Positions 18,496-49,208 of a stretch of DNA of 64,000 nt are shown piece after piece. The notes under the pieces were generated by a model. It saw nothing but the letters and a program-made list of their open reading frames with translations. It ran no database searches and was not told the origin of the DNA. Made by a program: the position numbers and the translations under genes. The stretch's first letter is position 1. Each line of letters opens with the position of its first letter. This stretch comes from Selaginella moellendorffii (taxonomy: Eukaryota > Plantae > Lycopodiophyta), in NCBI RefSeq assembly GCF_000143415.4, contig NW_003314319.1, forward strand, positions 710,365 through 774,364, read 5' to 3'.

Positions 18496-19206
18496 TTTCT
18501 ACAAGGTACCAGGTTTCGTCGAGATCGTCTCTACGTGGATAAGCGGTGTGATTTGTTGACATATCCGAATCTTAGCAATCGATTTCAATAAAAGGCGACA
18601 CGTAATGTAGATGTCTTTCTTACTCCTCCTCCACCACCTTTCGGTTCTTAATGGAAAAGATGGCCCTTACCGATAAGAGGATGCGATAGCGCACGCCGCC
18701 TTTCTTGAGCGAGAAAATAAAAAATAAAAAACCAAAGCACCACCGGCACGGAACATTCAAGAAAAAACTATAGCTTTTTTTTAATCGCTAATCGCCCACA
18801 AGCTTGGGCCGGTCCAAATATTTTAAAACGGCCAACGTACGGCCCCGCCAGATATGCCGATCTGATTCCTTTCTTGTGGCCTCAAATATATAACAGCCTT
18901 CTCTCTCACACAATGTGGTGTGTGGTTTTTGATTTTGGGGGGAGAGAGGATGTGAGGGCGATTCTTCCAAGATTGGCGTGTTAGGGTTTCCATCAGGGGA
19001 TCGATCGATCGGGCGCGCACAATGCGAGCGCAGCAGTGGATCGATCGACAGTGGCCGCGGCGGGGCCGCCGCGCAAGAGATTCTTCTCGCGGAATCTCTT
19101 TCCCTGTTGCGGCTTCGTCCTGCATTGTCCCTCCTTTAGTGCTCGCCCGGAAAGGGACCGAAATGGAACTACTTTAGGACTCGGGGAGGGGTATTTTTGG
19201 CGATCG

Positions 19207-22200
19207 ATGATCATGGATCAGGTACGCATCCTTTTTCTCTTCTCTTGAAGTTTTTGCGATTTGATTCTCGGTGTATGCGCAGAAGCAGCACAAGGAGGGC
19301 GATCATCTTCTCATCCTCGAGGGCGACGGCATCACGTATGTGGCCGTCCCGGACAAAGGTAGGATCTGTTTTGTGGATCACCACACGGGGACTTGGGCGC
19401 CTCTCCCCGAGTCCGAGCGATGCTGCCTCCGAGAGAGCCAGCACGTCCACGCGCATGTCCATCACGGAGAGATCACCGAGGATGTCTTGCTCGAACAGGT
19501 TTGGAATTGCCGTTCGTGGACGATTTACAAGCTGCCTTTTTTTTTTTCCTTTGTTTGTTAGTGCTTGGAGGAGACTTGTTGGGCTCTCCCGATGTCCTGG
19601 GACGGGCTGAGTTCATCGCTCAAGGACGAGCACAAGCATAACGACGACTGTGGCCACAACCAAATCGCTCACGGTGATCACTATGACTTTCTAGTCCCCA
19701 AGCAGGATGGATCATACATGCTCATCCGAGATGCCGGGGACTCTCAGTACGAGCATGGCCGCCTGGTTAAGGTGGGGGAATCGCTGGGAAAGCTCAAGAG
19801 GCGGCCGAAGCAGCTGATGGATATCTTCAGCTACCAGGGCCCCGAAGGCAAAGGTTACGAGATTCTTGCCGAGGAAGACGATGCTGTGGTAGCTCCCAGG
19901 CTTGCCGAGGACATCCTAAACATTCCAGAGAATTTCCAGCAAGTTGCACGGACGGTTTTAAACGTCATGGGTATTTGCTGCCCCTCGGAGGTTCCTCTCG
20001 TCAGGAAGATCTTGGAACCTTTACCGGGTGTCAAGGAGGTGTCTGTGAACTACACGTCGCGGATTGTGACAGTTCTTCACGACAGGCTCTTGACTCCTGA
20101 AGGACGTCTAGGTAGAGCTTTAGCTTTCGTGCTTGCTCTGTTTTCTTCTCACACCCGTTTTTTCCTTTCCTTTATTGCCTTTTCTTCAGTCAAAGCACTC
20201 AACGAAGCTAGACTAGACGCAAGTTTACATCATCGTGGAGAGCTAAAGAGGTCTAGTAACTGGCCCAGTCCCTGGACCATTTGTTGCGGTATTCTACTGC
20301 TCGTATCCTTCTTCAAACATTTTTGGAACCCTTTGAAATGGTTCGCTATCGGAGCGGTGGCTGTTGGTATACCGCCGATTTTTATGCGGAGCATAGCGTC
20401 TCTAAGACGATGGATTCTAGACATCAACATTCTTATGCTCATAGCAGGTATGATGAGTTAAAATGGCTTTTCAGTGTCTGATGATAAAACTATATCAGTC
20501 GGCGGTGCTATTGCTCTAACTGACTACATTGAAGCTGGATCGATCGTATTTTTGTTTACTCTAGCTGAATGGCTAGAAGGACGATCGAGCGAGCAGGTAA
20601 ATGTTATTGTTTTTCTTTTCGTTTGTCCTTACCCTTTATGACACTCGTCGTGGTGTCTCAGGCGCGTTCCGCATTGGCGTCCGGTCTGGATGTCCCTCGA
20701 AACGCCATCCTTGCCGAAACCGGGGCGATGGTCCCCGTTGACGAAGTTAAACTTGGATCATCAATTGCGGTCAAAGCTGGGGAGATGATTCCGGTAGACG
20801 GGATTATCATGTCAGGAGAGTGCTCTTTGGATGAAAGCAGCTTGACTGGTGAATCAAAGCCTGTCGAGAAGGCTTGCGGAAGCGAAGTTTGGGCTGGAAC
20901 AGTGAATTTGGCTGGTACGCGCGCTTATTCTTCAAGTTCTCGTTCAAAACTAACTTCATCTCTGTCTACAGGCTACATCACCGTTCAAACCACTGCACTT
21001 GCTGAAGACTCGGCCGTCTCAAGAATGATCAAACTCGTGGAGGAAGCCCAAGCAAAACGATCTCACTTCGAGCAGCTAGTGGAAAAGTTTGCAAAATTCT
21101 ACACTCCTGGTAAGTCCACAAATTTTCTGTGCGATTGCTAATGTAGCATTGCTATGCAGCTTTGGTAGCGACAGCTCTTGGTCTAGCACTCATTCCGTTG
21201 ATAGCGCACACTCACCATGAGAAACACTGGCTGTACTTAGCTCTCATTTTGCTGGTTGTGGCTTGCCCGTGTGCTTTAGTCCTTTCGACGCCCGTCGCAG
21301 TAGCCTGTGGAATACAACACGCAGCAAGACTTGGAGTCGTGATCAAGGGTGGAAGCTACCTTGAAATCCTTGCCAAGATCAAGTGCTTGGCAATGGATAA
21401 GACAGGAACCTTGACAGAGGGACACTTCCGCGTTTCCGAAGTTGTACCTGTTGGTGAAACCGAAGACCTGCAACAAATTTTGTATTGGTAAGTTTGACTT
21501 TTCTGCTGTGTGTCGCTGATAAATATTTTTTGTTGCGCAGGTTAACGAGTGTTGAAAGTAGATCGAGCCATCCAATGGCCGCTGCACTCGTCACATACGC
21601 TAGCTTACAAGATGTTGTTCCATCGAAATCCGTTACAGACTTTCAGATTATTGAAGGCGAAGGTGTTTCCGCCGTTGTGGATGGGCACTTGGTAGAGATT
21701 GGTAACGCGCGATTAGCATCTCGCCTTGGCTGGAGCAGTACAGGTTTCCATCGGCTCCTCCTTCAGTGGACTTGTAATCTAACTGTTCGTATTTCTGCAG
21801 CCATTACGAAGCTAAAGAATCAAACAGGAACCGTCGGCTGGCTTGGAAAGGATCACCAGCTCCTGGCAGTTTTTAGCCTCGAGGATCATGTACGGGAGGA
21901 AGCGGCAGAAGCAGTGTCGAGTCTAAAGGTTGGGCTTGGAGCGTTCTTCCCGTGTTCCTTACAAGCTTTATTTTGTTTATGGCAGCGTATGAAGGTCCAG
22001 ATCCATATGCTAACTGGGGATAACCATGAGACGGCCCAGAGTGTCCAGAGAAAAGTAAGCTTCTATTTCCATCTTCGAAGTGTCACTAAATTATCTCCAT
22101 TGCAGTTGGGAGGAGTTACTGTACACGCCGGTCTTCTCCCCCAGGACAAAGTCAGAATCATCCAAGAGCTGAAAGAAAACCACGGTGTGACGGGAATGAT

Positions 22201-22831
22201 AGGCGACGGGATAAACGACGCCCCGGCTTTAGCAGCGGCGGACGTAGGATTCGCCATGGGTCTAGCCGGATCAGCAGTGGCAATGGAGACATCGGACGTT
22301 TTCCTCATGACCGACGATCTCCGGAAGCTGAGCATGGTGGCGAGTCTGGGAAGGAGAGTCCGCACCAAAGTTATACAGAACGTTGTCATCTCGGTGGGTC
22401 TCAAAGTCGCGATGCTGGCACTCTCGTTCGCTGGCTATGGCTACCTGTGGATGGCGGTCCTGGTAGACGTCGGGGCGTGCTTGCTGGTGATCTCAAACAG
22501 CACGCTTTTACTCCGAGGAACAGGGAAGAAGAGATCATCGGGCCACCACCATCACCACGGAAAGAATTGCAAGGATCACGACCACGATCACGACGGTGGT
22601 AAACAGTGCTCCAAGGACGACGATCACGCCGGAAGAACACAGTGCTCTGATCACGAGCATGGCGCTGAGAAGCACCAGCACCATCGCCATCCCAGCCACG
22701 ACCATGGTCACAACCATAGTCACGAACATAGCCACCACAGTCACGACCATCACCACCACCAGGATCAAGGCCACTCACACTGCAAGAAGAAGCACGCTTG
22801 TGGCAAAGGCCACTCACACGCTCACTGCTAA
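19207..22831 (+). CDS. P1B-type Zn/Cd-transporting heavy-metal ATPase (HMA2/3/4-like) with a His/Cys-rich N-terminal extension and a His-rich C-tail (copy A)
   Basis: Motifs include the metal-binding domain 'GICCPSE', '[10 protein letters not shown]', '[11 protein letters not shown]', 'DKTGTLT', 'SSHPMA' and '[11 protein letters not shown]', plus a C-terminal poly-His/Cys tract. The start exon is inferred (MIMDQ, intron, KQHKEGDH). Confidence 0.93.
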
Positions 22832-23067
22832 CGTTTGACAGAATCTAATTTAAACGCTGAGAATATGCTTGGTGATTGTTATTGGCCTAGGCTCTGTAAC
22901 ACGTGGCAGGCGGTAAAAATAAAACCCCCGCCATTGTGGTTTTAGGTTGGAGGAGGGTTGTGGGTGGATATGCTAGATCGCGGCGATGGCGAGGGCGGCA
23001 GCGTTCTCGCGGAGGATTCTTGATTGTTTTGAGTGATCTGGGGACTCGCATTTTGATTCTGGAGGCC

Positions 23068-25279
23068 ATGGAAGGCGAGGACACGACTTGCCGATCGCTG
23101 CTGCGGGAGCTCCAGGTAACCTCGCGGAATATTGCCTCTGGAGTTTCTCACGATCGCGGTGGATCGGCCGCGCGCAGACCATCTGGGAGGAGATGGGGGA
23201 GAGCGACGAGGAGAGGGACAGAATGCTGCTCCAGCTGGAGCAAGAATGCCTGGATGTGTACCGGCGAAAGGTGGATCAAGCGAATTGCGCGAGGGCTCGG
23301 CTGCACCAGCTGCTGGCGGATTCCGAGTCGGAGCTCGCGTCGCTCCTGTCACTCCTGGGTGATCGCCCTTGCATGGTACGCGTTGTTTGATCCATCTCAG
23401 CTTTTCTAATGCCCGTTGTTCTTCCTTTCAGTTAGAGAAGAGGTCGGGCACTACTCTGCGAGAGCAGCTCTTGTCCGTCTCACCTCAGTTAGAATGCTTA
23501 CGTCTGAGGAAAGAGGAGCGGCTGAAGCAATTTGAGGACGTCCAATGCCAGATACAAAGGCTCTCTCGGGAGATATCGCCGGGGACATTGCAAGAGGCCG
23601 AGAATGGAGCTCTTTGTTGGAAAGATTTATCGCTGAGAAAGCTGCATGAGTACCATTGCCAGCTTCAAGAGCTTCAGGATGAAAAGGTTGGTTTGTATTG
23701 GCACGGTTGGCATTCTTTTTTCTTACAAGCGGCTTTTCCAGAGTAGCCGGCTTCACAAAGTCTCAGAGCTTCTCGAGGTTCTGCAGGGATATTGCGTCCT
23801 TTTGGGGATAGACTACACCGAGGCTGTCAAGGAAGTGCATCCGAGCCTTTGTGATCCAGGCCAGAGCAGAAGTATTAGCGATGAGACGCTAGAGAAATTA
23901 GGCAAGGCGATCGAGGACATGGAGAACGAGAAAAGTGAAAGACTGCAAAAGGTGATAACGGTTTACCTTTTGACAATGACGCGTTAGTTTCATTGCAGAT
24001 TCACAATCTTGTTGCTCTCTTACGCGAGCTGTGGAATCTAATGGATACACCTTTCGAAGAAAGGCAACCATTTCGAAATATCATCCGCAATCTTGCGGCA
24101 CCAGAGCACGATCTAGCGGAGCCTACTTCTCTTACTTTGAAAACCATCGCACAGGTTCTTTCTCATGCGTTTTGTTCTTTCTGATACTTCGCTTGTACAG
24201 GCCGAAAAGGAGGTGGTTAGGCTAAATCAGTTGAAAGTAAGCAGAATGAAGGAACTTGTGCTGAAGAAGCAGGGAGAGTTAGAAGAAACTTGCAACATGG
24301 CTCACCTGGACTGTGATCCAAATCTAACTCAAGAAAAAGTGGCAAGGTTACTGGAGTCAGGTATAAATTTATTCTGTTTACATTTCTTGGCTGATGTGTC
24401 GTGTGCACAGGGATAGTGGACTTGTCGGAGCTACTTGCTACAATCGAAAGTAGTATCGCGGAGGCGAAGGAAGAATCACTCGGTAGACAAGATATAATGG
24501 AAAGAATGGAACGATGGATTAGTGCATGTGAAGAAGAAAGTTGGCTTGAAGAATACAATAAGGTATGAGCGTTACGCTATTTCACTTATTCATTTTCGAT
24601 TGTAGGATGAAAGCCGCTTCAATGCAACCAGAGGAGCACATTTGAGTCTAAAACGTGCAGAAAGAGCTCGTGTCATCGTGGCCAAACTCCCCAGTGCGTT
24701 TGAATTCTTCGTTTGCTATTTCCTTTTCTCAGTTTTCACAACCCGTTTGCAGATCTTCTTGAATCATTGAAGTCCAAAACGCGGTCTTGGGAGGACGAAA
24801 GAGGCAGGCCCTTCTTATATAACGGGGTACGTAAGTGATTTTCGTAGACGCTTCTGAAAGTGCTTTGCAGATTTCTCTACTGGCAATTCTAGAAGAATAT
24901 AGCTTGCTACGACGAGAGAAAGAAGAAGAAAAGCGCCGACTGAGGGTAACTCTGCAGTTTAGTGCCTGTTAAGACGTTAACTGGCTAAATGCAGGAGGAG
25001 AAGAGAATGCAGGAGCAACTGCAAACTGAGCAGGAACTGCTCTACGGCACAAAGCCGTCCAAAAAGGGACAGGTGGGACTTCGCGTGAGTGGAAACAATG
25101 CAAACCGACGACTTTCGATAGTCCCTGAGCCCTTACCCGCACCTAAGGCTAGCAATCAGGGTCCTCAAAAGGGTAGCCGGGTGAAACGCTACTCTCCGAT
25201 GATGAATTACGTTGCCTTGCCTAAGGATCCCGAAGCTTCTTCAATTGGATCAGCTCCGGATTCTCCTGTTGCAGCATGA
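23068..25279 (+). CDS. MAP65: Microtubule-associated protein 65 (MAP65/ASE1) (copy A, intact)
   Basis: Motifs include '[11 protein letters not shown]|[32 protein letters not shown]' and '[21 protein letters not shown]...[14 protein letters not shown]', and the C-terminal 'NYVALPK'. Confidence 0.95.
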
Positions 25280-25672
25280 AGGTCAGGTTTTTGTTAGAAT
25301 GGACCCTTGCGTGATGTTTTGCCTGTGGTGGCCACAGCGGTTTTGAAAATTAGGACGATAAGCGGGGTTTATACTGTAAGTAGAGTTTGTTTCTTTGCTA
25401 TCAAGGGTAATCGCGTATCCTTTCTCCAGTGCTCCGTGTTTTGTGTATTGGGAAAGCGTAGGAGCGTGTGCTATTTGTTCAAAGCTTTGATTGGTGTAAA
25501 GCATCGAACTAATTGTTTCGTGTTAAGTTACATTCAAGGTACATACAAGTCTTGGTTTGCTTACACTTGGAACTTTAAATTCTTTGCGGAGCTTCTGCTG
25601 TCGAGAATTGACGCAGACAAGTTTCACACAGGTGATGCTCTCAAATGATTCAAAGGCTCGCAAGCTTGACAT

Positions 25673-28367
25673 CAGCGTTTGACAAACCCTTTCACCTTCC
25701 AAAGCAAAAATCCTCCTCAGAGTTTAACCTCCAAGGATTTTTCAAAATTCCCAGGATTAAACCTTCTAATCAAAATTTTCTCAAGTAAAAATCCTTTTAT
25801 TAATAAAAACATAAGGTTAAACAAGCTTACAACTGTGAGAAAATTTGTCGATAGTGTGCACTTTTGGTCCACAACTTCATCAAAGTTAAACTTCTGAATT
25901 TCAAGACCTTCAACTGAAATCCTTACGAGAGGATCAATTGTTTCAATACTCATTTGATTTCTGTATTTGTTCTTGATCAAGTTTATTCTGCTAAAACCTC
26001 ACTCGCAACTTGCAATGCTAACACACTGCACCATCCCAATTTCACCAACTCGAAGCAAGTTTGGAAAGCTCTCTGCCCAACCTGTTTGACTATGTATGAT
26101 GCTCCACATATCAATAAAATTTCGTCCTTTCCATTCCTTTGAGGCAAGTAGCTTCCAAGTCAAATACTCTTCCATGAAGGCTGAAGGATCCACAATGCCT
26201 TTAACAAGAACTCCATCCACCTCTAAATGCCTTCCATAAAATTTTGCAAGCTCCCTTGCCTCTGTAATCCCAAATTATTTGTTTTCCTTGACAAGGATTG
26301 GCAAATTAACCGGAGCTAGAACCTGCATCTTGGAGAGTATCCCTGTGTCTTGTAGTCGTTGTCTAATATTTGCAATGAGAGCAAAAGTAAAGGAGATTTG
26401 AAACTGCATAGCTTCTTGAAGATCACTTCCATCTTCTGATCGGATCAATTGCATAGTTTTGTAAGCATCTCCTTTAACTGAAACTCTCAAAGCATGGAGG
26501 AAGCCATCCTTACTACCACCATCAGGGATGCATGGATATGATTTGTTATCCATGGGATTACCATTCAAATCAATCTCATCACTAATGTAATATTTGTTCA
26601 GCTTCACAATAGTCTCTCGGCACAAGGGTCCAACCATGGTGATGTCGATTAGCTTCTCTTGGAATTTCTGATTGAGACTACTCATCACCTGTAAAATATC
26701 AGCCAAAAAATGCAAGACATACTTGTTCTTGAGAGTTCTCAGCTTGTTGTAAAGTTGCAGCTTGCCACTTCGTTTGAAAAGCTCAGCTATTGGCTCCAAA
26801 CATTTGCAAAGCTTAGGAAAAGCCCCTCCACGACTTAGCCATCTCGTATCCTGTATGCACTACAGCTTAAGCTTGGCATGATCGTGTTCCATCTCAATTT
26901 CCATCAACTGAGCCAACCTTTTCAAGCTTTTGCTGAAGTAAGCTGCTACCTTATTCACTAGTTTATCAATCGTCATGCATTGTGTAGCACATTCTCCATC
27001 CCCATAAGCATCTTCCACACATAAATTGGCTCAATGTGCCATACAATGAACACTACTTAAGAAGGGATTAATCTCCTTTAGCCTAGTTGCTACCCCTGTC
27101 CTGCTACCAGCCATAACATTACATCCATCTGAACCAAAACCTATGAACCGCTGCATATCTAAGTTCCACTGCTTAAGCATATCACTAATGCAGTTAAAGA
27201 TACTTGCTGCACCACTATCACCAATGTTGACAATCCCCAAGTAGCTTGTCTTCACACAACCACATTCGATGTAAGTCACATAAAAAATAGTGCTGAAAAT
27301 AGATCAAATCGTAAGAAAACTAATTCATCCACCATCAATCCAAAATAAAGACTTTCCCTGACTTTTTGTAAAATATTTTTAACCATAACCTGAAGTGAAA
27401 CATGAACCATATTAGAATCAATTAACATGGTCTCATAAACATACCTTGTTAATAGAAGTTATCAGTCGTGAACAACCTTTGTCACTATCGTAATATCTTG
27501 GAATGTTCATCCCATTAAGTCGATGAAGTTCAATCAACTCTAGAAAACGAGTGAATGGAGCAAATCCTTTTGCAATATAATAAGCAGAACGAAATAACAC
27601 AAACACCCCTTGTTCAGTATGGTGTAGATGCTTAATTGTAACTTTTAAAATTGATTGTTACTTCCCACGACGCACGTCCTTAGCAAATACAGACTCCTTG
27701 TGATCTTCAGAGTTAGCATGACTGCGTAAGGCACTTTTTCGAAAATTACTACTACCTTGTTTGCCAAAAATATTCTTAGTTCGTGGATTTCCCTTGCAAA
27801 TCCTGCAAAACATTGTGCCTTCAGTCACATCAAATTCTAACTAACAGTAGCTTTGCTTCTAATGCTCCTTAAAATGCCCTGATGCTGCATCACCATCTAG
27901 TTCCTCAATATCATTCTCAATCTCTGTTTGCACAACAACCTTCCAAAAATTTAGAGTTAATTGCCTCCCAAAAGCAAGATCAGTAGCTAAAGGACACTTC
28001 TTTTTACCTGGAGGTAATTTTAGCATTCTACCATGTTTAATTAAGTAGCACGCAGTGTCTCACCCGAGTGGGCTCTCGCTCCGGAAAATGACCTACCTAC
28101 TCCGCTGACAGGTGGTATGTAGTATATTTTACTAACATCTTTAATACTAAGTTAAATGTACTTATATTTCAATTAATTAATATGGGTTAACAAAAAAATC
28201 TTTTTCTTATTAAAATACCCAAGATAAAATCCTTTTGATATCAAATAACCAAAGTTAAATCCTTATACATGATTTTTTTCCCGGGCCGTAGATCCTTCAT
28301 GGTTTGATCTGCCCAAGAGTTTTAAAAAAGTTCCAGGTTTTTATATGGAGGCGTTTGTCGACCACTG
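25673..28367 (-). mobile_element. hAT DNA transposon (ZNF862-like transposase, degenerate), 2695 bp, with TIRs and an 8-bp TSD
   Basis: The TSD CTTGACAT lies at 25665-25672 and 28368-28375. The imperfect TIRs are CAGCGTTTGACAAAC and (reverse complement) CAGTGGTCGACAAAC. Transposase remnants include 'GFGSDGCNVMAG...SVHCMAH', 'DTRWLS' and the dimerisation region 'SIASCE*GFS...KNKYRNQM', with stops. An empty site is present at about 55852-55859. Confidence 0.92.
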
Positions 28368-28439
28368 CTTGACATGCTATGTACCGAAACAACGCTTTTA
28401 AAAGGACTCCATACCTTGGCAGCGGGCAAGGACCAAAGC

Positions 28440-28932
28440 ATGGCCGGGGCTAGCTTCTTCCTGTCCTTCTCGTCTCTTTTCTCTGCCTTCTCAGGTAAGC
28501 ACATCTTTTGAGCTCGCAGCTCTCTTCACTAACAGCTGATCTGCAGGAATGCTTCACCAAAAGCGGCTACGCGCTCTTCATCCCAGGCTACAACATCTTC
28601 CCTGTTGCAGGCTGCAAGAAAGACATCGGGCCACCTTACAAAGACGGCTGCAGCCTCGCATTCTCCAGATCCACACTCGCAGCACGTTGCAAAGTACCGG
28701 GGAGTGGAGTTCTTCGTGGACAACGTGACCATCGCGCATCTGACCCTGGATGATCTCCAGTGCACGGTGAGCTTCCAAGGTCCCATCGACCTGGACCGGG
28801 GCTATGGAGACTACGCTTGCCGGGGGAACTGCATCCTTGTTTAGAACCTCTGGAAGTGTCCAGGACAAGGACATTTGCTCCAGCGGGTCCAAGAGACTCT
28901 GGTACCTGACTGCCAACCTGGAGACCACGTGA
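28440..28932 (+). pseudogene. Possible remnant of a small secreted Cys-containing protein gene (family not recognised)
   Basis: A hydrophobic first exon 'MAGASFFLSFSSLFSAFS' ends at a GTAAG donor. Protein-like segments follow in three frames: 'ECFTKSGYALFIPGYNIFPVAGCKKD', 'YRGVEFFVDNVTIAHLTLDDLQCTVSFQGP' and 'DKDICSSGSKRLWYLTANLETT*'. Confidence 0.35.
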
Positions 28933-28982
28933 CGACGTAAGAACTGTAGCATTTTAGCTGAAGCGGACAGGATTTTTTCATC

Positions 28983-31900
28983 ATGGAGGTGAGCGGCTTG
29001 GTGAGCCCGCTGTGTGTCTTGGGTCTGGACGCTGCCAAGAAGGTATGGGACTGCAATGCCAACATTGAAAGGCTGGAGAATGCCATGGCACCCCACATCC
29101 AGGCCAAGATCAAAGCTTTCAGTGAGCACAAGGAGCGAAATGGACCTGGCTTTATGTTCTCTGAAGCGGCCGAGGAATGCTTGGAGCGTGTCAGGACATG
29201 GAATGGCAGGGCGCAAGAACTCTTAGGGTCACGCAACAACAGGATCTGGAGCCCCGTTAGACGGTATGTTGTGCAGCATTTTTGTGCAAGAAGGCTGAAT
29301 TTATTTCTCCCTATAGGTACAAGCGGAGTGGCAAGATCATGGAGTGCATAAGCTCCTACCAGGATCTCCTGTCGCAGATCGAAAGTCACGGGCACGAGCT
29401 GAATGTGGACATTGCGAAGCTGGCAAAGAGGGCGACCAGCATCCAGGCCATGCTTAATAAGTTTCATACTCACAAGCACCGGAATCCAGAGTTCCGCTAC
29501 TCTGATGGAGCCGAGGAGTGTCTTGATCTTGTCACAAAATGGAACGACAAGGCGCAAGCACTGCTGGGATCACAGTAAGCATATACACTTGAGAGCTTTA
29601 ACAGTACAGCTAAATGATCTATGGATGTTTCACAGGGAGAAGCGTTATGGCGAGATCTCGGAGCTCATTCACAGCTACGAGGGCGATCTCCTTCCGATAA
29701 CTGAAAGGTACGAGCGAGAAGAGTTGAGAGTGATACAGCCGAGCACTAGCTTCGCCGTACGGAGTTTCCCGCAAGACAGAGGCCCTGCAAAAAAATATGT
29801 ACGGCGTGTTGTTCCTGATGCCATGTTTGGGGACCATGAACTACTGGATGAGGTAGTGAATGCCCTCTTGGATCCTGAAGCCCGTAGCAAATGGGTTGGA
29901 CTGTTGGGAATGGGAGGGTGTGGAAAGACCACCCTCGCAAGCTGCGCGCACAATGACCCGAGGGTGCGCCAGCATTTCCATGACAACATTGTGTGGATCA
30001 CTGTGAAGAAAGATGCTTCGGAGGACGATCTCAAGGCCCAGCTCCTCAACGCTCTTGAATGGGGTGAATTGAAAGAGAGGGCCAAACGAAGCCTTGACGA
30101 CATGCAGCACTTGGCACGCGATGTTGCTGGTGGTAGCCGTGTCTTGCTGGTACTGGATGATGTGTGGGACTGGAGCTGGGCAAAGGAACTGGATTTTATA
30201 GCACGGCCATCCTCTGGCCGGATCCTGGTAACAACCAGAAAGGAAGGCATTTTGCGCAGCCTGGATGCAAAGGCATTTCCTGTGCATCAGCTATCAATGG
30301 ACGAAAGCAAAAAGATGTTTTGGAAGTTTGCCTTCGGTGTGCATGATCCACAACCCAGTGACCCTGATGTTGTGGGACTTGCCAAGAAAATAGCTCGAAA
30401 ATGTGAGGGACTTCCTCTCGCTCTGGAAGTGATTGGCAGTGCCATGGCTGTCCACAGAAGTGAAGGGCCACATGTGTGGGAAGAACGATATAAAAGGTTG
30501 CACTTGTCCAATGATCCAGACGTTGAGAAGCAGATGTTCAAGCGCTTGAAGTTCAGCTATGACGAGCTGGGAAACTATGAGGGTGAAAAGCTGCAAGAGT
30601 GCTTTCTCTATGTGGCCGCATTCCCAGAAGATAGGTGGATTGGGTTTACTGAGTTGAGGAACTGTTGGATGGAGGTTGGGTCAGAACTCTCACCCACAGC
30701 GATTGTCAATGAACTGGAACGGAGATGCCTGGTGAAGATATCTAAGTCTTGGAGGGATGAAGAAGCTCCTGGTTATATAACAGTACACGATATGCTACGC
30801 AAACTGTGCATAAGAATCTTAAAAGGGAAGTACAGCCCACAGCAAGAGCACGAGAAGGGATGCCTGTTTGGATATGAGTGGACAAGTGGCATTCAGGATG
30901 CAACATTTGCTAAAGTCTCACTCATCTCAAAGAATGTTGGCAGCTTTCTATCCGATAATCATGTGCGAGATGCCTTGCTTATTGCTCACTCTATAGGACT
31001 TTCTAATGTGGATGACAGTCTTATCGATCACATACAAGGTGTCAAGGTATTGAGCTTGCTGGAATGCTATATGATCCATTTTATTCCAGAGAGCATATCC
31101 AAGCTGAAAAACCTTCAAGTGCTTGACATTCGACGAACAAAAGTGAGTCAACTACCAGATGCGCTTTTCAGCCTGACATCACTGAAATATCTAAAGTGTA
31201 CTGAATATCTTGAGTGTAACATTGCATTACTGCCCCAGCTCTCCAACTTGGAAGAGCTGGTGCTGAAGGTTGATTCAAAAGAGGACTCATCAGTTGTGGA
31301 TTTCACTGGAATTTCGCGTAAACTAAGAATTCTAAAGCTAAGAATAAGACAGGGTACAATGAAGGTGCCAGAAAGCATGGGGAAACTGGAGCACATTGAA
31401 ACATTGGTTTTACATGCAAAGACCATCGACTTTACCAGTGTCGTTGGGCTATGGGAACTTGTCAACCTAAGAACATGTGAAATTTCTGTGTTATCCGTTA
31501 GTAGAGCTCCCTGGAAGCGAATGTTTAAGAAATCAATCAGGCTTCGACGTTTATCCATCACTCGGGTAGAAGACAGTGAAAATAATGGTGAAAGCGTTGA
31601 ATGGTTGCAACTACGATATTTACGCATCCGTGATATTATAAACCTATCTTTGTTGCCCCATCGCCTAGAAACACTTGACATTGACTGCGGTGGTATCCAC
31701 TTGTTCAACCTGGATGGATCATTCCCACATCTTGGAGATCTGCGTCTTACGAATCTACACATTGCACAGTCAGAATTCAAGGATGATTTGGCTGCCAGTC
31801 TTACAAATCTGAATAAGTTGGAGTTTGAGCTAGCTCCTGATATTGAATGGGAGCACTTGCCTCTCTTTGTGGCACAGCTCCCCAATCGCCTCGAGTATCT

Positions 31901-32252
31901 GACATTAAAGGGTTGCATAAAGAGACTGTTGTTGCCAACCGAGAGTTCATCACTTCAGGTTAAAGATATTTTAGTATCGAGCAAGAAGATGCAAAATGAT
32001 TTCTTTGAGCCATCAGATCAAATGGCTGATATAGATACCGTGTGGTTGAGGTGTCATGAGAGTATCGTTCCATCGTCCATTGCATCACTGCCAGGTTTGA
32101 AACGTCTTAACATTTTACATAACGATGCACTGTGGTCCCACAATCACAGCGAGGCCGCATTTCCCAGGCTGGAATCGCTATCCTGCCCGAAAGACATGAA
32201 ATTTCCACCTTGGCTTGAGGACCGCCCCAAACTCGAGATACGTAAGTTTTAA
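28983..32252 (+). CDS. NLR immune receptor (NB-ARC-LRR) with a tandemly duplicated N-terminal helical CC/RPW8-like domain; intact, 1051 aa predicted
   Basis: Exons 28983-29263, 29317-29574 and 29636-32252 splice in frame (3156 nt). Motifs are the P-loop 'GMGGCGKTTLA', kinase-2 'LLVLDDVWD', RNBS-B 'GRILVTTR', 'CEGLPLAL', 'LKFSYDEL', RNBS-D 'CFLYVAAFPED' and the MHD variant 'VHDML', followed by LRRs. Confidence 0.93.
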
Positions 32253-32337
32253 TTTCCAAAGCGTTTTGGTATTCGAACGTCTGTTGTTTGACATATTTCT
32301 CCTCTAAATCAATATATACAAAACTGCGACCGCACCG

Positions 32338-35300
32338 CTACTCTTCCACCAGGAGAGCTTCGCCTCTCACGTCCCTGGCAACCTCTAGCACCTCGGGTTT
32401 GCTCCTTGTCAATTCCAATTCTTGTTCAGCTGCTACCTCGGTTTTGCGCACAGCAGCACCACCTTTGCCGGCTCTTATCCTCGCCAGGAAACCTCTCACG
32501 AGAGCCTGCATTTTCGTTGCAGCGCCCTGGACGTACACGGCCTGGATCCGCTTCGCACGCTCGATGCGCAGAGTGAGAGGCAACCCCTGCGTTAATCCGA
32601 GCCAAACGTTAGTATCAAAAGCTTGGAATAGCAGCTACTTACAGTTGGTCCGATCTTATACAGCGTCAGCGTTTCCAGCAGCTCCTTGAAAGGGACTCCT
32701 TTGTTTGGAACTCGAAAACTCATCACCTCGTACTCTATTCTCATGTCAGAACAAAGAAAAAAACGAGTGAGAGACAAAGAGCGATTGAGAGGAACACGCC
32801 AAACCATTGGGTCGTGTATTTGTAGTGCCGGCCCAACGGATCCCCGAGGGCATTTACAAATCGTCGGAGTTTGTGCATGCCAATGTATCCCGTAGCACTG
32901 GACGATTGTAAAGTTAGTTCCACAAGGACTTGAACGTAAGTAAGTGGCTTACTTGGGATCGAATGGTTCTTGGCTCCACAAGTTTCGATATGCTAACAGG
33001 TGCTCCGGCATGACTAGAGTTCTCGTTCACAAGGCCGAAACAGCATCCAGTATGACAGCCACAAACAAGTTCATGAATATGTGACTCCCGACCAAGACCA
33101 AGAAGGCGAAGATACTTCGGCCCTCTGGATAGCCACAATCATCGCCGAGTAGTGTTTTACCGTTGGTGCAGGCGGGTGCATCAATTGTGGTATCCATCAT
33201 AACACAAGACCAGTTATCAAGATTTGTATCCTGTAAAAGAAAAGCAAAACTGAAAGTGATAGAAAAGCCAAGCCTTTACCTGAAACACCGGGATGAAAGC
33301 ATTGACGAAAGTGCGAAAGTTGACAGACGGGCCAATGCAGGTCCCTTCCTTCATTGCACTGAAGAGTTGGAACGCCATCCCCGCGAACATATACATGAAA
33401 ATTGCGAGAAGAGCGAGTATCTCAGCTACAGTTGGCAAACAGATGAACATTGTTCGCATAATAACCTGTGCTCTCGCTACGTGAGGAATGATGCAGAAAA
33501 CTTGAGCAATGTAGGCAGTGCGGCCGACATAGCCCTTCACCGTTCCCTTCTTTCCCATGAGACCAATGGCGGCCATTATGGAGAGTCCAAACTCCATCTG
33601 CCGTGCAACCTCGTTCTTATAGACCTTCCACTGGAGAAAGGAAAAACCAGGTGGTCAAACAAAAAACAATCGAGAAAAAGATGAATGAGGTACGTCGTCA
33701 CCAAGGAACTTCATCACGGATAAGCAGGAAATATGTTGTAATCGCACAGTGAGCCATCTGACGCCGGTCCGAAACAACTGCCGACTGCCCAGCATAGTTA
33801 GTCGCAAGTAGCCCGGGGTAGCCAAGGAGTGCGAGGATCATGCACTTTTGATATGTCGGATTACGAATCAAGTAGAAGCACATCCCCCGGATGGGATTGC
33901 TTGGTCGTCGAGCCAGCGGAATAGCATAAGTTTTCTGGATGATACGGTTCATGTCCCTCCGCAGCTTCTGCCTCTCTGTGAGAAGAACTGCTCCAGAATT
34001 TTTTCCAAACTCGTTGATAAACACCCCGATGAAAACTCTGACGATATAAAATCCCCCGATACAGCAGAATGCCACGAAAAACAAGGCGTTGACAGGACTC
34101 GCGTTCCGAACAGGCTGGTGGTCTTCCCTAGTGATGTCCATGACAGGATACATGAAGTGCATCAGCCAGTTCTCGAAAGTGGAGCAGACGAACATACTGA
34201 GCAGGGCATTCTGAATGTTGTCGAAGTGGAAAACGTTATTAACCCAGGCTCGTGGAGCAAGGATGCCGATGTCATTAACATAGAGGCCGGTACAATATGC
34301 TCGGTGCGTGATTGTCGGGTCATTGCATTTCCAGAGAAGTTCCCCGAAACTGCTGCAGCCCGATGGTTCCAAATATCAGGAGAATTGAAAATGTGAAGAG
34401 AATAACCGACACAATTGCTGGAATAGTCCGAAAAAGATTTGATAATAATGACCTCAGTCCTGTAAACCGAACCACGAAACGAAATGGCCAAAGAGAAGTA
34501 AACGCACCGACGGTTGGTATGGAAGTTTCACCCTCAGCGTTATACTTCAGAAGAATAAGCGCATTGGTGACGAGAATAAACAAGTCCAAGATGTTGTACC
34601 AGTCACTCAGGTATGCGTCTGGCGCAAAAATAAGTCCCTGTGCAACGATCTTCATCAAACAGTCTAGCAAAAAGACCTGCTTCAAAACAATGTACAATGT
34701 CAGGCAAAATAAGATAAGCATGTGCTTACCACAAAGTTGATCTTATGCAGACTACAGATGAAATCGGGGACAATTATCGGCTCTCCATCATCTCCCATCT
34801 CAACTACGAGCCAAGTATTGATGACTATCCAAACTATCACAAACCACAAGTACGGTTTACTGCCGATGATCTTCCTAGACAGGATCCTTATCGTGTTGCC
34901 CTCTCCAAATAGAAGAAGCGACCCTTCTCGCAAGTACCACGGTCTCTGTATGGTTGTAAGAGTTCTCTCGAGCTCTTCGTACTCCGCAAGCTGGAAAGAT
35001 TTCCTGTTGCTAGAGGCCCTGCTTAGATTTCTGCCAATTTTTGGACTGCTGAGAATCTTGTCGAGAGTTATCACGGCATCTTGAAGTGCGGTCCTTGAAC
35101 CCCTCCTTTCACCGATATTAGAGAAAACCAGAAACCTGTAAAACTTGGGAAGAACGCCTGTGGCGCGACGGCGGTGCTTCAGAAAACTCTGCAGCTGGAA
35201 CGACCGACGATGGGGCCTCTAAAGCGGATCCAGTAGTACCCCCATCAGACTTAGCAGCAGTTACTGCCGGGCGTTGACGACCCTGGGACCCCTTCTCTCT

Positions 35301-38300
35301 TGGCCCGGTCTTACGTGATCTTTGACGTTTAACATGCGAGTTGTCATCCGTCGCAAACCTTTCATTTCTTCTACCGCACCCACAACCCAGCTTCTGCTTC
35401 TTGTGAGTGCCTGACTTTGCATTCTCCTGATTAACTTCATGTGCTCCATCTGAAAGAAAATAGTTCTTAGATGCAGTTCTCATTTTTTACCTTACTCACC
35501 CGTTGGATTCGCTTCTTCTGGTTGTCAGTAAGCTCGTTTCTCTCGAGCAAGACAGCAATGATAAGATTCATAACGACGTAAACTGTCACGACGAAGTAAA
35601 AGACGTATAGAAACGGCGCCACTACGCTGCAAACACGAATGCGTCAATACTAGAGATACGTGAGTGGCTGCTTACTTGTATTGAACTCCAGGTCGCAGGG
35701 AATTCCACATTTGGTTTACCCAGGATTCAGCCATGGTTACTGTAAACCAGACGAGCATGGCTTCCAGTATGGAATCATGATTTCCTCGCGGATACTCTTC
35801 AGGAAAGCTGTAATACTGCCCACTGTACAATTCCATGCTGATGATAGAGATTACTATGATAACCAGAAGGAAAAAGAAAAAAACCCCCGCCAAAGAGCCA
35901 ACACTTTCCATGCAAGTAGCCTGCATCACGTATTAAAATCAATCAAAGTGAATGCAGCAACTCACCACTACACTGGGATATTTTGCAACATACTTCTTCG
36001 AAGAGTAAAACCACCGCTTAATTCTTATGGATGTTAAATTTGGAAACGAATGAGAACTGAGTGCCACAATAGATGTCAAAAAAACTATCAAGTCCAAAGT
36101 ATTCATTCTTGAAAATTTCAGGATCAGACCAGAAGACAACATGAAAACAAAGAACTCACCATCGTCAAGAAAATCGCCAGGACCGTATGCTAGAAAGCGC
36201 AGCAGAAGTTCCCCGCTGAAAGCAAAAAGCATTACTGCTTGCAACCCGTCTGCATACAAAATTTATCATGCTGAACGAATAGAAAGGAAGTCGTGAAATG
36301 AATACCGAGCGTATGCAGCAACCGTTTTGACATCCCATACTTGAGGGACGATAAGAGCACGACGTTAATGGTGACACTGAGAAGTACTCCCCACTGAAAC
36401 TTGGGATGTTCGACGATGTCGCGGCTTTTTTCGGAAACTGTCAACGCTGCTTGAACTCCTAACGTCATACTTCGACTGAAAGACCTACTGGACCGCACTC
36501 TCATTGATCTGGCTTGAAGGGCAGTCCGCCGGGAGGTCCGTGTCCGATTTTATGCTCTCGCGACATTCTGCTGCACCTTTCTTGACCTGTCGAGTAAGCG
36601 GTTATACCATGGCATGTGCGAGTCGGCTTTGACGATATTGTCTTTCAGCACTTGTGCCATCATCGTTGCATCGTAAAAGGACACCGAGGTTCTACGGGCT
36701 TTCCTCAGCAAAGCCTGGATAATAACAGCTTAACTTAACCCAAATCAGTCGGTCATTAAAAACAAGTGTGCACCTGATGCTCTGATCGAACACGAAGAAA
36801 TACACCACTGATACCGGCGATGAAAACGTTCGCCAGGAAATATGTACCCAGAACAGTTAACGTCATAAAGTAAGTATCTGTGGTGCAATGGCTTGTGTAA
36901 GCAATAAAAGAAACAATGTCAACGCCTTACTGGCTCGCTCCCCTTCAGCATCCTTCACATCATGCATGACGAGGCTCCATCCTTCCAAAGTTATCACCTG
37001 CAGAGTGACCACTTTGAAGTGTGCTAAGGCGATAAGATGCTATGAAGTGACACAAACCTGAAACATGGTAAGCAGCGAATACCAGAGATAATCAAAAGTT
37101 GTCGCTCCATGGTTGGGATTCTCGTATGTCTACAAACAAAGAGATGGATAAGGAATGAGCTTATAGAAAAAACTCACCATACAGTTCTGAAAGGTAGACA
37201 TACGTAGCCGCCAGCAGCTTTTAGTCACAAAAGCGCATGGGATAAGCAAGTTGCTTGTCCGCTGTTCGAAAGCACCTGCCCAGGAGGATTTTGATTTCAC
37301 GTGATAAGAACTATCGAGATTACCTTTGATTCAACGAGTTTTGCAAGAACTGCGTGCCGAGTAGAGAATAGAAAACCAACAGAAAAAACGTCGAAAGGAT
37401 AACGTTTTGGAGAGGACCAACGCCCTTTTTCACGGCCGCCATGATGGTCTATTGTAAAGTGTTAACAATGCATAGATCAGAAATTTACAAACCATACTAT
37501 GACATCGGCAAAAAATATGATGTGCTTCAACGCTAGCAGGCCCCGAAACATGCGGAACACGGCTATCCACGCGAAAAAATCATGTGCAGTTATGCACCTC
37601 CCAAAGAGCTGGTGAAACACTTACGACCATCAAATACAAAACCTCAACATTACCAGGAATCGAAAACAATGACAAAGTCGAGCCTATTGTATGGATTCCG
37701 CATGTAGCAGTGACGACCTCTGATAAAACCAAGAGCCAAAATTCGTAACACCATTTCAATCCTACAAACACAAGTGTGAGGGGAAACCTCGAAGAGGGAA
37801 ACAACAATTACGTATAAAGCGCTGTGATGAGCCCGTCCAGGAAATCGATGTTGAAACTCCACACATGTGTCCATCGTTCATGCCTAGACCCCGCCATCGC
37901 TTGAAAGACAAGCACTGCCATACGGAGCATATGAGAAACACAAGAATATACTCGGCTCTCCTGCCACCATAGCAGGAAGGATGGTAAACTTCTATCCACG
38001 TACTGATTGTAGAGAAGCCTGAAATGTATAAGCGTGACGGGCTGTAGAAGCTCCAAATTCCAAGCTCCAGTCCCGACAGCACTCTGCCTCGCCTTTCTTC
38101 TTATATCTTAAACAGAACATAAGAACTCTCCAAAGTCGAAGGAAGTAAAGTTACCATGAGCCTCTTGATCGCAGTGTAAGCCCTCTTCCAGTTCTTGGTT
38201 GCCCGGGAATCGGGAATCGCTCGGGCCAGTTGATCCAGTGCGGCAATCAATGCGGCAGACGAAGACGATGACGCTGCTCGGTCACAATCCGGCGCTGCTT

Positions 38301-38400
38301 TGCTCAAGCCGTGAATCGGAGGCAGCCATGTCGGATGCGGAGCTATGAAATCGTGATCTTCTTGCGGGACGGGATCAGTGGAAGAAGTATTCGATCAATC
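32338..38400 (-). pseudogene. Four-domain voltage-gated Ca2+/cation channel (Cav-like) with a C-terminal IQ motif; copy A, 5'-truncated and frameshifted
   Basis: The four pore loops are 'VITLEGW', 'VTMAESW', 'CSTFENW' and 'DTNLDNW'. Other segments are 'RNPYNRLDF', 'HFDNIQNALLSMF', 'FIGVFINEF...LLTERQK' and the IQ motif 'ATKMQALVRGFLAR'. Lesions relative to the sister copies are a frameshift near 33720, a small deletion near 33040 and a lost splice acceptor near 32746. Confidence 0.85.
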
Positions 38401-38785
38401 ACTAGCTAAGCTACATTATGCCTCTTTGTAGGACATCCCTGATGTAGAGGGAGATCTTCATAGCTTGCCACTCAAGCTTTCCCTAGGGCTTCGTGTGTAG
38501 ATTAGATTACGCCATGTACCAAGATAGAGAAAGAATATCCATTTAATTGTCACTTTTAGTCAAAAAGCTTTTGGCCTCAGAAAGGAGAACAACGCTTTTA
38601 AAGAATTTTATCCACACTGGAGCACGGCGACAATGGAGTTAAACCCGCGACCGTTGCTAGTAGCTGTCAGGATTCGAACTCCCGATGGTTTGAACACTGG
38701 ACTGGATTGATGGGCCTTCACGGCGGTGCGTGTGTGTGCCATGCCAGGAGAAGCGCATTGAGCAAGACCAAGATCGGCGCACTGA

Positions 38786-48766: not shown

Positions 48767-49123
48767 GGTTGCATAAAGAGACTGTTGTTGCCAACCGAGA
48801 AGTCATCACTCAAAGCTCAAAAACTTTCACTATCGTGCAGGAAGATGCAAAATGATTTCTTTGAGCCATCAGATCAAATGACTGATATAGAAGACGTGTG
48901 GTTGAGCTGTGATGAGAGTATCGTTCCATCGTCCATTGCATTGCTGCCAGGTTTGAAACGTCTTGGAATTTTTAGGCCAAGCATGATACTTAACGATGCA
49001 CTGTGGTCCCACAATCACAGCCAGGGCGCACTTCCCAGGCTGGAAGGGGTAAACTGCCCGGAAGGAATGAAAATTCCACCTTGGCTTGAGGACCGCCCCA
49101 ATCTCAAGAGACATAAGTCTTAA
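48767..49123 (+). pseudogene. NLR copy B, C-terminal LRR fragment (continuation after the 7.5-kb insertion)
   Basis: 'GCIKRLLLPTEKSSL...MQNDFFEPSDQM...PPWLEDRP' matches 31911-32252. Confidence 0.92.
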
Positions 49124-49208
49124 TTTCCGAAGCATTTTGTTATACGAACGTCTGTAGTTTGACATATTTCTCCTCTAAATCAATATATACAAAACTGTGA
49201 CTGCACCA

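What the first reader, a model, noticed from the sequence alone, without database searches (positions are those of the whole stretch)
32338..38400. Four-domain voltage-gated Ca2+-type channel in a land plant, with an E/E/E/D filter and IQ tail
Seen: four pore loops TLEGW, MAESW, TFENW and NLDNW, S4-like segments, a III-IV linker 'LLTERQK' and a C-terminal IQ motif. Established: four-domain Cav-like channels occur in animals and green algae but are absent from angiosperms. Inference: retention here may relate to flagellated sperm. All three copies in this window are damaged, so the window records either loss of the family in progress or debris from an intact locus elsewhere. Lesions differ among copies, so a near full-length ancestor can be reconstructed (5' end from B, domains I-IV from A and C).
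Basis: partly seen in the sequence, partly recalled or inferred. Interest (0 to 1): 0.7.

Follow-up and report, generated by a model that had tools for sequence, protein, structure and literature searches.

The report
Dead copies of plant calcium-type channel
The stretch holds three broken, non-functional duplicates of an animal-style four-repeat calcium-type channel gene whose intact original lies about 0.2 Mb away on the same spikemoss (Selaginella moellendorffii) scaffold, so this locus is wreckage and only the gene family behind it is of interest.

Summary
All four pore loops, the S4-like segments, the III-IV linker and an IQ motif lie on the minus strand of window 32338-38400, colinear in one four-domain gene whose best solved relative is Cav1.1.

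The window is Selaginella moellendorffii scaffold GL377623.1. Copy A (32053-38424) is 94% identical in DNA, introns included, to an intact 23-exon gene (XP_024544215.1, 1695 aa) about 0.2 Mb away on that scaffold.

All three copies start inside intron 1, so they lack exon 1 and the start codon. Beyond that:
- Copy A has 11 frame-breaking indels, two deleted splice acceptors and one stop codon.
- Copies B and C also carry large deletions.

Substitutions private to A and C fall evenly over codon positions. Those on the intact gene's side favour third positions.

The E/E/E/D filter is an artefact of decay. The intact gene, copy C and all land-plant relatives compared carry D in repeat III, so the family filter is EEDD.

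The copies sit in a roughly 21-kb unit that also holds an NLR gene and was triplicated in tandem.

The family is not being lost.

This scan had already flagged the family in this genome on other DNA. Reviews say land plants lack such channels, yet public annotation shows them in land plants with swimming sperm.

The parts
32053..38424 (-). Copy A: non-processed pseudogene of the four-domain channel. It matches the parent from intron 1 to about 315 nt past the stop codon. Exon-2 to exon-23 equivalents span 38385-32341.
   Evidence: blastn shows 94.0% identity over 6513 nt to L001:10091-16588. Spliced alignment to P0187 keeps all parental intron positions from intron 2 on.
48877..51688 (-). Copy B: pseudogene with a 3688-nt internal deletion that removes exon 12 to exon 20 (junction near 49903). 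It also has a 13-nt frame-breaking deletion at 51442.
58268..63033 (-). Copy C: pseudogene with deletions of 745, 264, 89, 75 and 126 nt and several small frameshifts. Its 3' end is cut off and abuts NLR copy 3.
36977..36991 (-). Repeat I pore loop, TLEGW (filter E)
   Evidence: same as the parent
35720..35734 (-). Repeat II pore loop, MAESW (filter E). The parent has TAESW.
34166..34180 (-). Repeat III pore loop, TFENW. The E comes from a substitution private to copy A at 34172. The parent and copy C encode D (TFDNW).
33210..33224 (-). Repeat IV pore loop, NLDNW (filter D). The parent has TLDNW.
33965..33985 (-). III-IV linker motif LLTERQK, conserved in paralogue P0002 as well
32341..32586 (-). 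Last-exon equivalent, holding the IQ-like motif
   Evidence: Pfam IQ scores 21.7 bits here, 19.0 bits in the parent tail and 24.7 bits in P0002.
38025..38066 (-). 20-nt deletion (at 38066) and 1-nt deletion (at 38025) in the exon 3 equivalent. Both break the frame and both are shared with copy C.
37593..37593 (-). 24-nt deletion that removes the intron 5 acceptor and the start of exon 6. Shared with copy C.
37193..37224 (-). Two 1-nt deletions in the exon 8 equivalent, private to A. There is another 1-nt deletion at 37926 (exon 4).
   Evidence: In DNA run X1 both forms are present at 37922.
36550..36552 (-). In-frame stop codon replacing parental Leu479, private to A
35123..35306 (-). 10-nt deletion (35306) and 2-nt deletion (35123) in the exon 17 equivalent (II-III linker)
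   Evidence: The DNA run X1 contig at 35122 lacks the two bases, as the window does.
33722..34341 (-). 1-nt insertion (34341) and 2-nt deletion (33722) in the exon 18 equivalent (repeat III to repeat IV S2)
   Evidence: The insertion is confirmed in DNA run X1.
32747..33040 (-). 4-nt (33040) and 2-nt (33016) deletions in the exon 20 equivalent, and a 7-nt deletion over the intron 21 acceptor (32747)
29403..32252 (+). NLR gene 1: an intact 949-aa ORF with NB-ARC and LRR domains, tail-to-tail with copy A. Its last roughly 66 codons lie in the block that is also homologous to the parent locus.
16940..38424 (.). Tandem unit 1 (P-type ATPase gene, NLR, channel pseudogene). Unit 2 is 38754-51688 and unit 3 is 52148-63033, both shortened by deletions.
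   Evidence: self-blastn

Best explanation
Window 32053-38424 (copy A), 48877-51688 (B) and 58268-63033 (C) are non-processed pseudogenes. They are DNA-level duplicates, with introns, of the intact S. moellendorffii four-domain channel gene encoding XP_024544215.1. That gene lies about 0.19-0.22 Mb away on the same scaffold, GL377623.1.

Shown:
- The shared block runs from the parent's intron 1 to about 300 nt beyond its stop codon, ending inside the 3' end of an NLR gene that lies tail-to-tail with the channel.
- The copies therefore have no exon 1, start codon or promoter.
- The block sits in a roughly 21-kb unit (ATPase, NLR, channel remnant) that was triplicated in tandem.
- B split off first, and A and C share later lesions.
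- The copies have since drifted, gaining frameshifts, a stop codon, splice-site deletions, losses of S4 arginines and, in A, a D-to-E change in the repeat III filter.

Inferred:
- The copies make no channel.
- The parent family (EEDD filter, four voltage-sensor-like repeats, IQ-like tail) probably forms a voltage-gated, Ca2+-permeable channel.
- Its restriction to land plants with swimming sperm suggests a role in sperm flagellar signalling, as for Chlamydomonas CAV2.
For: Locus:
- The window is identical to GL377623.1 over 20.7 kb, and the parent gene lies on the same scaffold.
- The parent's 23 exons translate exactly to the 1695-aa protein, which has four Ion_trans repeats.

Duplication and truncation:
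- Copy A matches the parent at 94.0% over 6513 nt, introns included.
- Exon divergence (3.9%) is about the same as intron divergence (3.5%).
- Homology starts in intron 1 in all three copies.

Lesions:
- Four indels are shared by A and C. Site patterns give 31 for A+C, 13 for B+C and 4 for A+B.
- An independent DNA run confirms the indels at 34340 and 35122.

Selection:
- Private substitutions fall 21/16/23 over codon positions in A and 23/18/29 in C.
- On the parent side they fall 13/7/26.

Expression:
- Spliced contigs in three RNA-like runs carry the parent's base at 34 of 40 differing sites and lack A's indels.

Filter:
- EEDD is seen, where the repeat is present in the model, in every land-plant relative compared except Ceratopteris (EDDD). 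Controls behaved as expected: Cav3 EEDD, Cav2 EEEE, Nav DEKA.

Context:
- The tandem units were mapped by self-blastn.
- An NLR C-terminal relic lies in the parent's 3' flank (E 1e-16).
Against: - dN/dS between the dead copies is about 0.55, not 1 (Nei-Gojobori without a transition correction). Some constraint early on, or gene conversion from the parent, is not excluded.
- The copy A to copy C distance (6.6%) exceeds the copy A to parent distance (5.1%) although A and C share lesions. This suggests rate differences or conversion.
- Only some of A's indels were covered by copy-specific DNA contigs.
- Transcription of the copies is not excluded, because the contigs cannot show absence.
- GenBank calls short gene models inside copy A.
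- Which of the two loci is the ancestral site is unresolved.
Confidence: 0.93

Rival explanations
1. Copy A is a working gene, and the apparent lesions are assembly errors or unusual introns.
For: The exon-intron layout is fully kept and protein-level identity to the parent is about 94%. GenBank has short gene models here.
Against: - Copy A has eleven frame-breaking indels, one stop codon, two lost acceptors and no exon 1.
- The indels at 34340 and 35122 are reproduced in an independent DNA run.
- Four lesions are shared with copy C.
- Its private substitutions fall evenly over codon positions.
- Spliced RNA contigs carry parental alleles, not A's alleles.
Confidence: 0.02
2. The window records the loss of the whole channel family from this plant.
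For: There are three decayed copies in one window, and an earlier scan note reports more decayed copies elsewhere.
Against: - The intact parent and its 98.3%-identical second allele both exist.
- At least five further annotated paralogue groups exist in the same genome.
- The parent side shows a third-position bias.
- The parent is transcribed and spliced.
Confidence: 0.02
3. The dead copies are transcribed and act as RNA, for example as a source of small RNAs or antisense RNA that regulates the parent channel or the neighbouring NLR genes.
For: The copies lie tail-to-tail with NLR genes, so read-through would give antisense RNA. At 94-96% identity to the parent, cross-targeting would be possible. 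A few RNA-run contigs carry the window's base at single sites, such as 33788.
Against: - No promoter or exon 1 is present.
- No contig was clearly specific to a copy.
- Decay looks neutral.
- CpG decay is about twice the background rate in A and C, which suggests silenced DNA.
Confidence: 0.05
4. A transposon captured a fragment of the channel gene and spread it, as in Pack-MULE or Helitron transduplication.
For: All three copies end at almost the same point in intron 1, and the DNA just beyond that point differs between copies. A dispersed repeat lies 330-460 nt beyond the ends of A and B.
Against: - The copies lie within larger head-to-tail units that carry other host genes.
- The block shared with the parent locus ends inside an NLR coding relic, which points to a segmental duplication of a gene pair.
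- Terminal repeats were not looked for.
Confidence: 0.04

Closest known systems
S. moellendorffii XP_024544215.1 (RefSeq name 'voltage-dependent L-type calcium channel subunit alpha-1F-like isoform X1'), GL377623.1:963,499-969,771; second allele XP_024534439.1
   Same: Copy A shares 94% DNA identity with it, introns included, and the same intron positions. It has the same four repeats, III-IV linker and IQ-like tail.
   Different: The window copies lack exon 1 and carry frameshifts, a stop codon and deletions. Copy A has E instead of D in the repeat III filter and has lost four S4 arginines, read from the alignment.
Animal Cav3 (T-type) channels
   Same: Four-domain architecture and an EEDD selectivity filter. 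The Argopecten Cav3 control shows EEDD in the same alignment columns.
   Different: In the quick tree the land-plant clade (support 1.0) groups with unnamed environmental sequences, apart from Cav3. The PDB score to Cav3.2 (283 bits) is below that to Cav1.1 (331 bits). Cav3-specific features such as the gating brake were not tested.
Animal Cav1/Cav2 (high-voltage-activated) channels
   Same: These are the best solved-structure matches: Cav1.1 at E 1e-97, then Cav1.2 and Cav2.2. There is also a C-terminal IQ-like motif.
   Different: The filter is EEDD, not EEEE. No Ca_chan_IQ or GPHH Pfam domain was found in the parent. The clades are separate in the tree.
Chlamydomonas CAV2, a flagellar four-domain Ca2+ channel (Fujiu et al. 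2009, as cited in PMC5111745)
   Same: It is a green-lineage four-domain channel tied to flagellar waveform control, which makes it the functional analogy for a sperm role.
   Different: Its sequence was not at hand, so its relationship to the land-plant clade was not tested here.
Duplicated (non-processed) pseudogenes carried along in tandemly expanding NLR clusters
   Same: Introns are retained, the 5' end is truncated, decay is neutral, and the copy number follows the repeat unit.
   Different: The passenger here belongs to a channel family that reviews say land plants do not have.

Membership tests
[quoted passage not shown] | Four homologous six-helix Ion_trans repeats in one polypeptide | tested here: met
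   The parent P0187 has four Ion_trans stretches (E 4e-123). Copy A holds remnants of all four repeats, colinear with the parent.
[quoted passage not shown] | One pore loop per repeat carrying a filter residue before a conserved W | tested here: met
   The parent has TLEGW, TAESW, TFDNW and TLDNW. Copy A reads E/E/E/D. The control filters for Cav2, Cav3 and Nav fall in the same alignment columns.
[quoted passage not shown] | S4 helices with spaced Arg/Lys | tested here: met
   Read directly from the alignment and located in the parent at residues 242, 615, 1065 and 1370. Copy A has R-to-W changes in repeats I and III and two R-to-Q changes in repeat IV. Voltage gating itself was not tested.
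Functional gene of that superfamily (for the window copies) | An uninterrupted reading frame with a start codon and usable splice sites | tested here: not met
   Exon 1 is absent. Copy A has 11 frame-breaking indels, one stop codon and two lost acceptors. B and C also have kilobase-scale deletions.
Non-processed (duplicated) pseudogene | Introns and flanking DNA of the parent are retained, and disabling lesions are present | tested here: met
   All parental introns from intron 2 onward are kept, along with about 315 nt of 3' flank.
Animal Cav3 (T-type) | Placement inside the Cav3 clade | tested here: not met
   In the FastTree LG+G tree on 1252 columns, the land-plant clade sits with unnamed environmental sequences (support 1.0), apart from Argopecten Cav3. 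This is a quick tree with sparse named sampling.
Animal Cav1/Cav2 | An EEEE filter and the Ca_chan_IQ / GPHH C-terminal module | tested here: not met
   The filter is EEDD. Pfam finds only Ion_trans and a borderline generic IQ motif.
Two-pore channels (TPC) | Two Ion_trans repeats per polypeptide with EF-hands in the linker | tested here: not met
   The parent is a single 1695-aa ORF with four repeats. One spliced RNA contig runs from the II-III linker to repeat IV S1 (record 17).

The most novel reading that the evidence does not exclude
The parent family forms a conserved land-plant clade of EEDD four-domain channels. It was found here in lycophytes, ferns, mosses, a liverwort and Ginkgo, and in no angiosperm protein returned by the searches. 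Several reviews say that embryophytes have no such channels. The clade may be the voltage-gated Ca2+ entry pathway of swimming plant sperm, lost together with flagella in the other seed plants. The window copies themselves would remain dead passengers of an NLR cluster.
Probability: 0.4. Interest if true: 0.65.

Novelty: new member of a known kind. Interest (0 to 1): 0.3.

Why it matters
This locus matters little by itself. It is a clear case of a truncated gene duplicate that was carried along and multiplied by a tandemly expanding NLR cluster. It also shows a gene pair (NLR and channel) that decayed in opposite ways at its two copies.

It matters more as a pointer. The intact parent and its paralogues contradict the statement, repeated in reviews, that land plants or vascular plants lack four-domain Cav/Nav-type channels (PMC5824947, PMC6259924, PMC6509283, PMC5111745). 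The taxa in which relatives were found make a sperm-flagellum role testable in Marchantia (Mp2g23520) or Ceratopteris.

The work also warns against reading channel properties from pseudogenes. The E/E/E/D filter that gave the finding its title is one neutral substitution in a dead copy.

Tried and rejected
- **Distant guide protein.** The first spliced alignment used paralogue P0002, about 50% identical. It misplaced several frameshifts and missed an intron in the II-III linker. I replaced it with the 94%-identical parent P0187 and a DNA multiple alignment.
- **Tree alignment.** I used MAFFT FFT-NS-2 plus FastTree instead, so the tree is quick rather than careful.
- **Placing the window by exact protein.** The NLR1 and NIF-phosphatase ORFs were not on record. 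The thaumatin ORF was on record and placed the window.
- **Prior reports.** Searches for the family in land plants, Marchantia Mp2g23520 or sperm found none.
- **Sister clade.** An atlas search for its taxonomy was inconclusive, returning a few Oomycota and Chlorophyta records.
- **Two TPC-like genes.** Rejected.
- **T-type identity from the EEDD filter.** Rejected on the tree.
- **Processed retrocopy.** Rejected because the introns are retained.
- **Spliced models.** I built no joined, spliced or repaired model of copies A to C and sent none to any search tool. Window sequence went to the searches only as single ORF references.


Full report
**1. What is there**

- TLEGW at 36991-36977
- MAESW at 35734-35720
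- TFENW at 34180-34166
- LLTERQK at 33985-33965
- NLDNW at 33224-33210

The ORF pieces between them match Pfam Ion_trans, and the last ORF (32338-32583) matches the IQ motif at 21.7 bits against a cutoff of 20.3. The longest ORF (33698-34372, 224 aa) aligns to repeat III, the III-IV linker and repeat IV S1 of Cav1.1 at E 3e-30. Other Cav, Nav and NALCN structures follow behind it.

Self-comparison shows three copies:
- A around 32-38.4 kb
- B at 48.9-51.7 kb, missing the middle of the gene
- C at 58.3-63.0 kb, with several gaps

**2. Where the window comes from and what the copies derive from**

An exhaustive profile search with the 224-aa ORF gave land-plant proteins as the best hits. These came from Selaginella moellendorffii, Marchantia polymorpha (Mp2g23520) and Ginkgo.

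A word-index search with the full-length Selaginella paralogue P0002 added several more:
- further Selaginella paralogues
- Diphasiastrum
- Ceratopteris
- Sphagnum
- Ceratodon

One of the Selaginella paralogues, P0187, is XP_024544215.1 (1695 aa). It is 94% identical to the 224-aa ORF, against 55-69% for the other Selaginella paralogues.

Its gene lies at GL377623.1:963,499-969,771 (locus L001). My spliced aligner recovers 23 exons there with canonical introns of 45-72 nt, and they translate exactly to the 1695-aa protein. The protein has four Ion_trans repeats.

The thaumatin ORF of the window (46608-47261) is an exact product on the same scaffold. The fetched 20,657 bases are 100% identical to window 36608-57264. 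The window is therefore S. moellendorffii GL377623.1, and the intact gene lies about 0.19-0.22 Mb from copy A.

**3. The copies are DNA-level duplicates, truncated at the 5' end**

Copy A matches L001:10091-16588 at 94.0% over 6513 nt. The match includes every intron from intron 2 onward and about 315 nt beyond the stop codon. It is therefore not a retrocopy.

Homology begins inside the parent's intron 1 in all three copies. Exon 1, with the start codon, is found nowhere in the window.

At the other end, the shared block runs into the last roughly 66 codons of the neighbouring NLR gene (29403-32252, an intact 949-aa ORF with NB-ARC and LRR domains). The parent locus carries, on the opposite strand just downstream of the channel gene, a relic of that same NLR C-terminus. 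This relic lies at L001:16380-16553, is 60% identical over 58 aligned positions, and scores E 1e-16.

An NLR-channel pair lying tail-to-tail was therefore duplicated. One site kept the channel and lost the NLR. The other kept the NLR and holds a headless channel. Which site is ancestral cannot be decided from these data.

**4. Lesions**

Relative to the parent, copy A has:
- a 20-nt deletion at 38066
- 1-nt deletions at 38025, 37926, 37224 and 37193
- a 24-nt deletion at 37593, across the intron 5 acceptor
- a stop codon at 36552-36550, replacing Leu479
- a 10-nt deletion at 35306 and a 2-nt deletion at 35123
- a 1-nt insertion at 34341
- a 2-nt deletion at 33722
- a 4-nt deletion at 33040 and a 2-nt deletion at 33016
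- a 7-nt deletion at 32747, across the intron 21 acceptor

The 20-nt, 38025 and 24-nt lesions, and a 9-nt in-frame deletion, are shared with copy C. B lacks them but has its own 13-nt deletion and a 3688-nt deletion. C has further deletions of 745, 264, 89, 75 and 126 nt.

Site patterns give 31 for A+C, 13 for B+C and 4 for A+B. B therefore branched first.

An independent 2024 DNA run reproduces the window at the 34340 insertion and the 35122 deletion, and shows both forms at 37922. The lesions covered by that run are thus not assembly errors. The other lesions were not covered by copy-specific contigs.

**5. Selection**

Exon and intron divergence from the parent are about equal: 3.9% and 3.5% for A.

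| Lineage | Substitutions at codon positions 1/2/3 | Non-synonymous : synonymous |
|---|---|---|
| Private to A | 21/16/23 | 37:22, plus 1 stop |
| Private to C | 23/18/29 | 42:26, plus 2 stops |
| Parent side | 13/7/26 | 20:26 |

They indicate neutral drift in the copies and purifying selection on the parent.

Pairwise dN/dS between dead copies is about 0.55 rather than 1. I attribute this partly to the simple counting method, but it leaves room for early constraint or gene conversion.

CpG transitions run at about twice the background rate in A and C, but not in B or on the parent side. This suggests methylated, silent DNA, but no more than that.

Copy A has also lost four S4 arginines: R-to-W in repeats I and III, and two R-to-Q changes in repeat IV, read from the alignment.

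**6. The filter**

Plus-strand base 34172 makes the repeat III residue E in copy A. The parent and copy C both have the base that gives D.

I aligned 45 family members. The parent and P0002 read E/E/D/D, as do:
- Selaginella P0184
- both Diphasiastrum proteins
- Marchantia
- Sphagnum

Ceratopteris reads E/D/D/D, and partial models agree where they are present. The unnamed sister clade reads E/E/D/E.

The controls behave as expected in the same columns: Cav3 EEDD, Cav2 EEEE and Nav DEKA.

The E/E/E/D filter in the finding's title is therefore a post-mortem change in one copy.

**7. Expression**

Three RNA-like runs contain contigs that skip exactly the predicted introns, with GT..AG ends on the minus strand. 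The skipped lengths are 56, 53, 45, 59, 60 and 48 nt.

These contigs carry the parent's base at 34 of the 40 listed differences. They also lack A's indels at 34340, 33722, 35122 and 37218.

They therefore come from the parent, or its allele, laid onto the look-alike copy. This shows that the parent is transcribed and spliced as modelled. It gives no evidence that A is expressed, and contigs cannot prove that it is silent.

**8. Local context**

The copies sit at the end of a head-to-tail repeat unit. Unit 1 is about 16940-38424 and holds a P-type ATPase gene, the NLR and the channel remnant. Unit 2 is 38754-51688. Unit 3 is 52148-63033. Units 2 and 3 are shortened by deletions.

The pseudogene was thus multiplied as a passenger of a tandem triplication in an NLR cluster.

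GenBank has only short fragment models inside copy A. No protein encoded by this window appeared in the family search.

**9. The family and what is known**

The parent's best solved relatives:

| Structure | Score (bits) |
|---|---|
| Cav1.1 | 331 |
| Cav1.2 | 317 |
| Cav2.2 | 317 |
| Cav3.2 | 283 |
| Nav1.7 | 270 |
| NALCN | 234 |

I built a quick FastTree (LG+gamma) on 1252 columns. In it:
- the 13 land-plant sequences form one clade (support 1.0)
- the six Selaginella paralogues form a lineage-specific expansion (1.0)
- the sister group is unnamed environmental sequences (1.0)
- animal Cav2, Cav3 and Nav lie elsewhere

The channel therefore resembles a Ca2+-type four-domain channel with a T-type-like filter, but it is not a member of Cav1, Cav2 or Cav3.

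Named sampling was thin. Chlamydomonas CAV2, Cch1, NALCN and Cav1 proteins were not available to the tree, so deep placement is provisional.

Reviews state that embryophytes or vascular plants lack such channels (PMC5824947, PMC6259924, PMC6509283, PMC5111745). I found no paper reporting them.

RefSeq nevertheless annotates them in Selaginella, under inconsistent automatic names: L-, T- and R-type calcium channels and sodium channels.

Every named land-plant hit is from a lineage with swimming sperm. A further search with the Ginkgo fragment added only a fern, Adiantum.

**10. Relation to earlier scan notes**

The scan had already noted an intact EEDD four-domain channel gene in this genome (s1-402732). 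It had also noted decayed copies near an intact gene on another scaffold (s1-344439).

The second note may describe the allelic haplotype of this region. XP_024534439.1, which is 98.3% identical to the parent, lies on a 2.03-Mb scaffold together with a 149-aa fragment model, XP_024534454.1. I did not examine those loci.

**11. Handling**

I built no joined, spliced or repaired model of the broken copies and sent none to a search tool. Window pieces were searched only as single ORF references.

**Verdict**

The locus itself is ordinary, three duplicated pseudogenes. The interest belongs to the parent family, which this scan had already found.

Noticed in passing
L001:16380-16553 (GL377623.1, just downstream of the intact channel gene, opposite strand): This is a relic of an NLR C-terminus, 60% identical to the last 53 residues of the window's NLR1 (E 1e-16). 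The two loci descend from a tail-to-tail NLR-channel pair and decayed in opposite ways.
   Followed up: partly
window 16940-38424, 38754-51688, 52148-63033: A unit of about 21 kb is triplicated head-to-tail. Fragments of the P-type ATPase region (21955-25672) recur at 52710-55859 at 89-94% identity.
   Followed up: partly
window 41243-48767: A 7.5-kb insert separates NLR copy 2 from its last roughly 140 nt. It carries two thaumatin-family genes (46608-47264 on the plus strand, and one near 45573-46076 on the minus strand) and has internal repeats (42544-43201 matching 47602-48744).
   Followed up: no
window 35053 joined to 37065 (runs X8 and X13): Contigs in two RNA-like runs skip 2011 nt with non-canonical ends. 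That would remove repeat II and most of repeat I's pore. It could be a parental splice form or an assembly chimera.
   Followed up: no
window 36608-38157 (L002:1-1550): The GenBank annotation calls short gene models (143 aa with Ion_trans, and 111 aa) inside pseudogene copy A.
   Followed up: no
copies A and C against the parent (alignment): CpG transitions run at about twice the rate of other changes in A and C, but not in B or on the parent side. This may be a mark of methylation.
   Followed up: partly
P0003 (Ginkgo Gb_09885) in the tree: The partial Ginkgo model sits on a long branch next to Diphasiastrum rather than outside the lycophytes. Its placement and origin deserve a check.
   Followed up: no
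RefSeq proteins: Isoforms and alleles of the same Selaginella genes carry mutually inconsistent automatic names, such as L-, T- and R-type calcium channel and sodium channel types 1 to 9. This hides the family from keyword searches.
   Followed up: no
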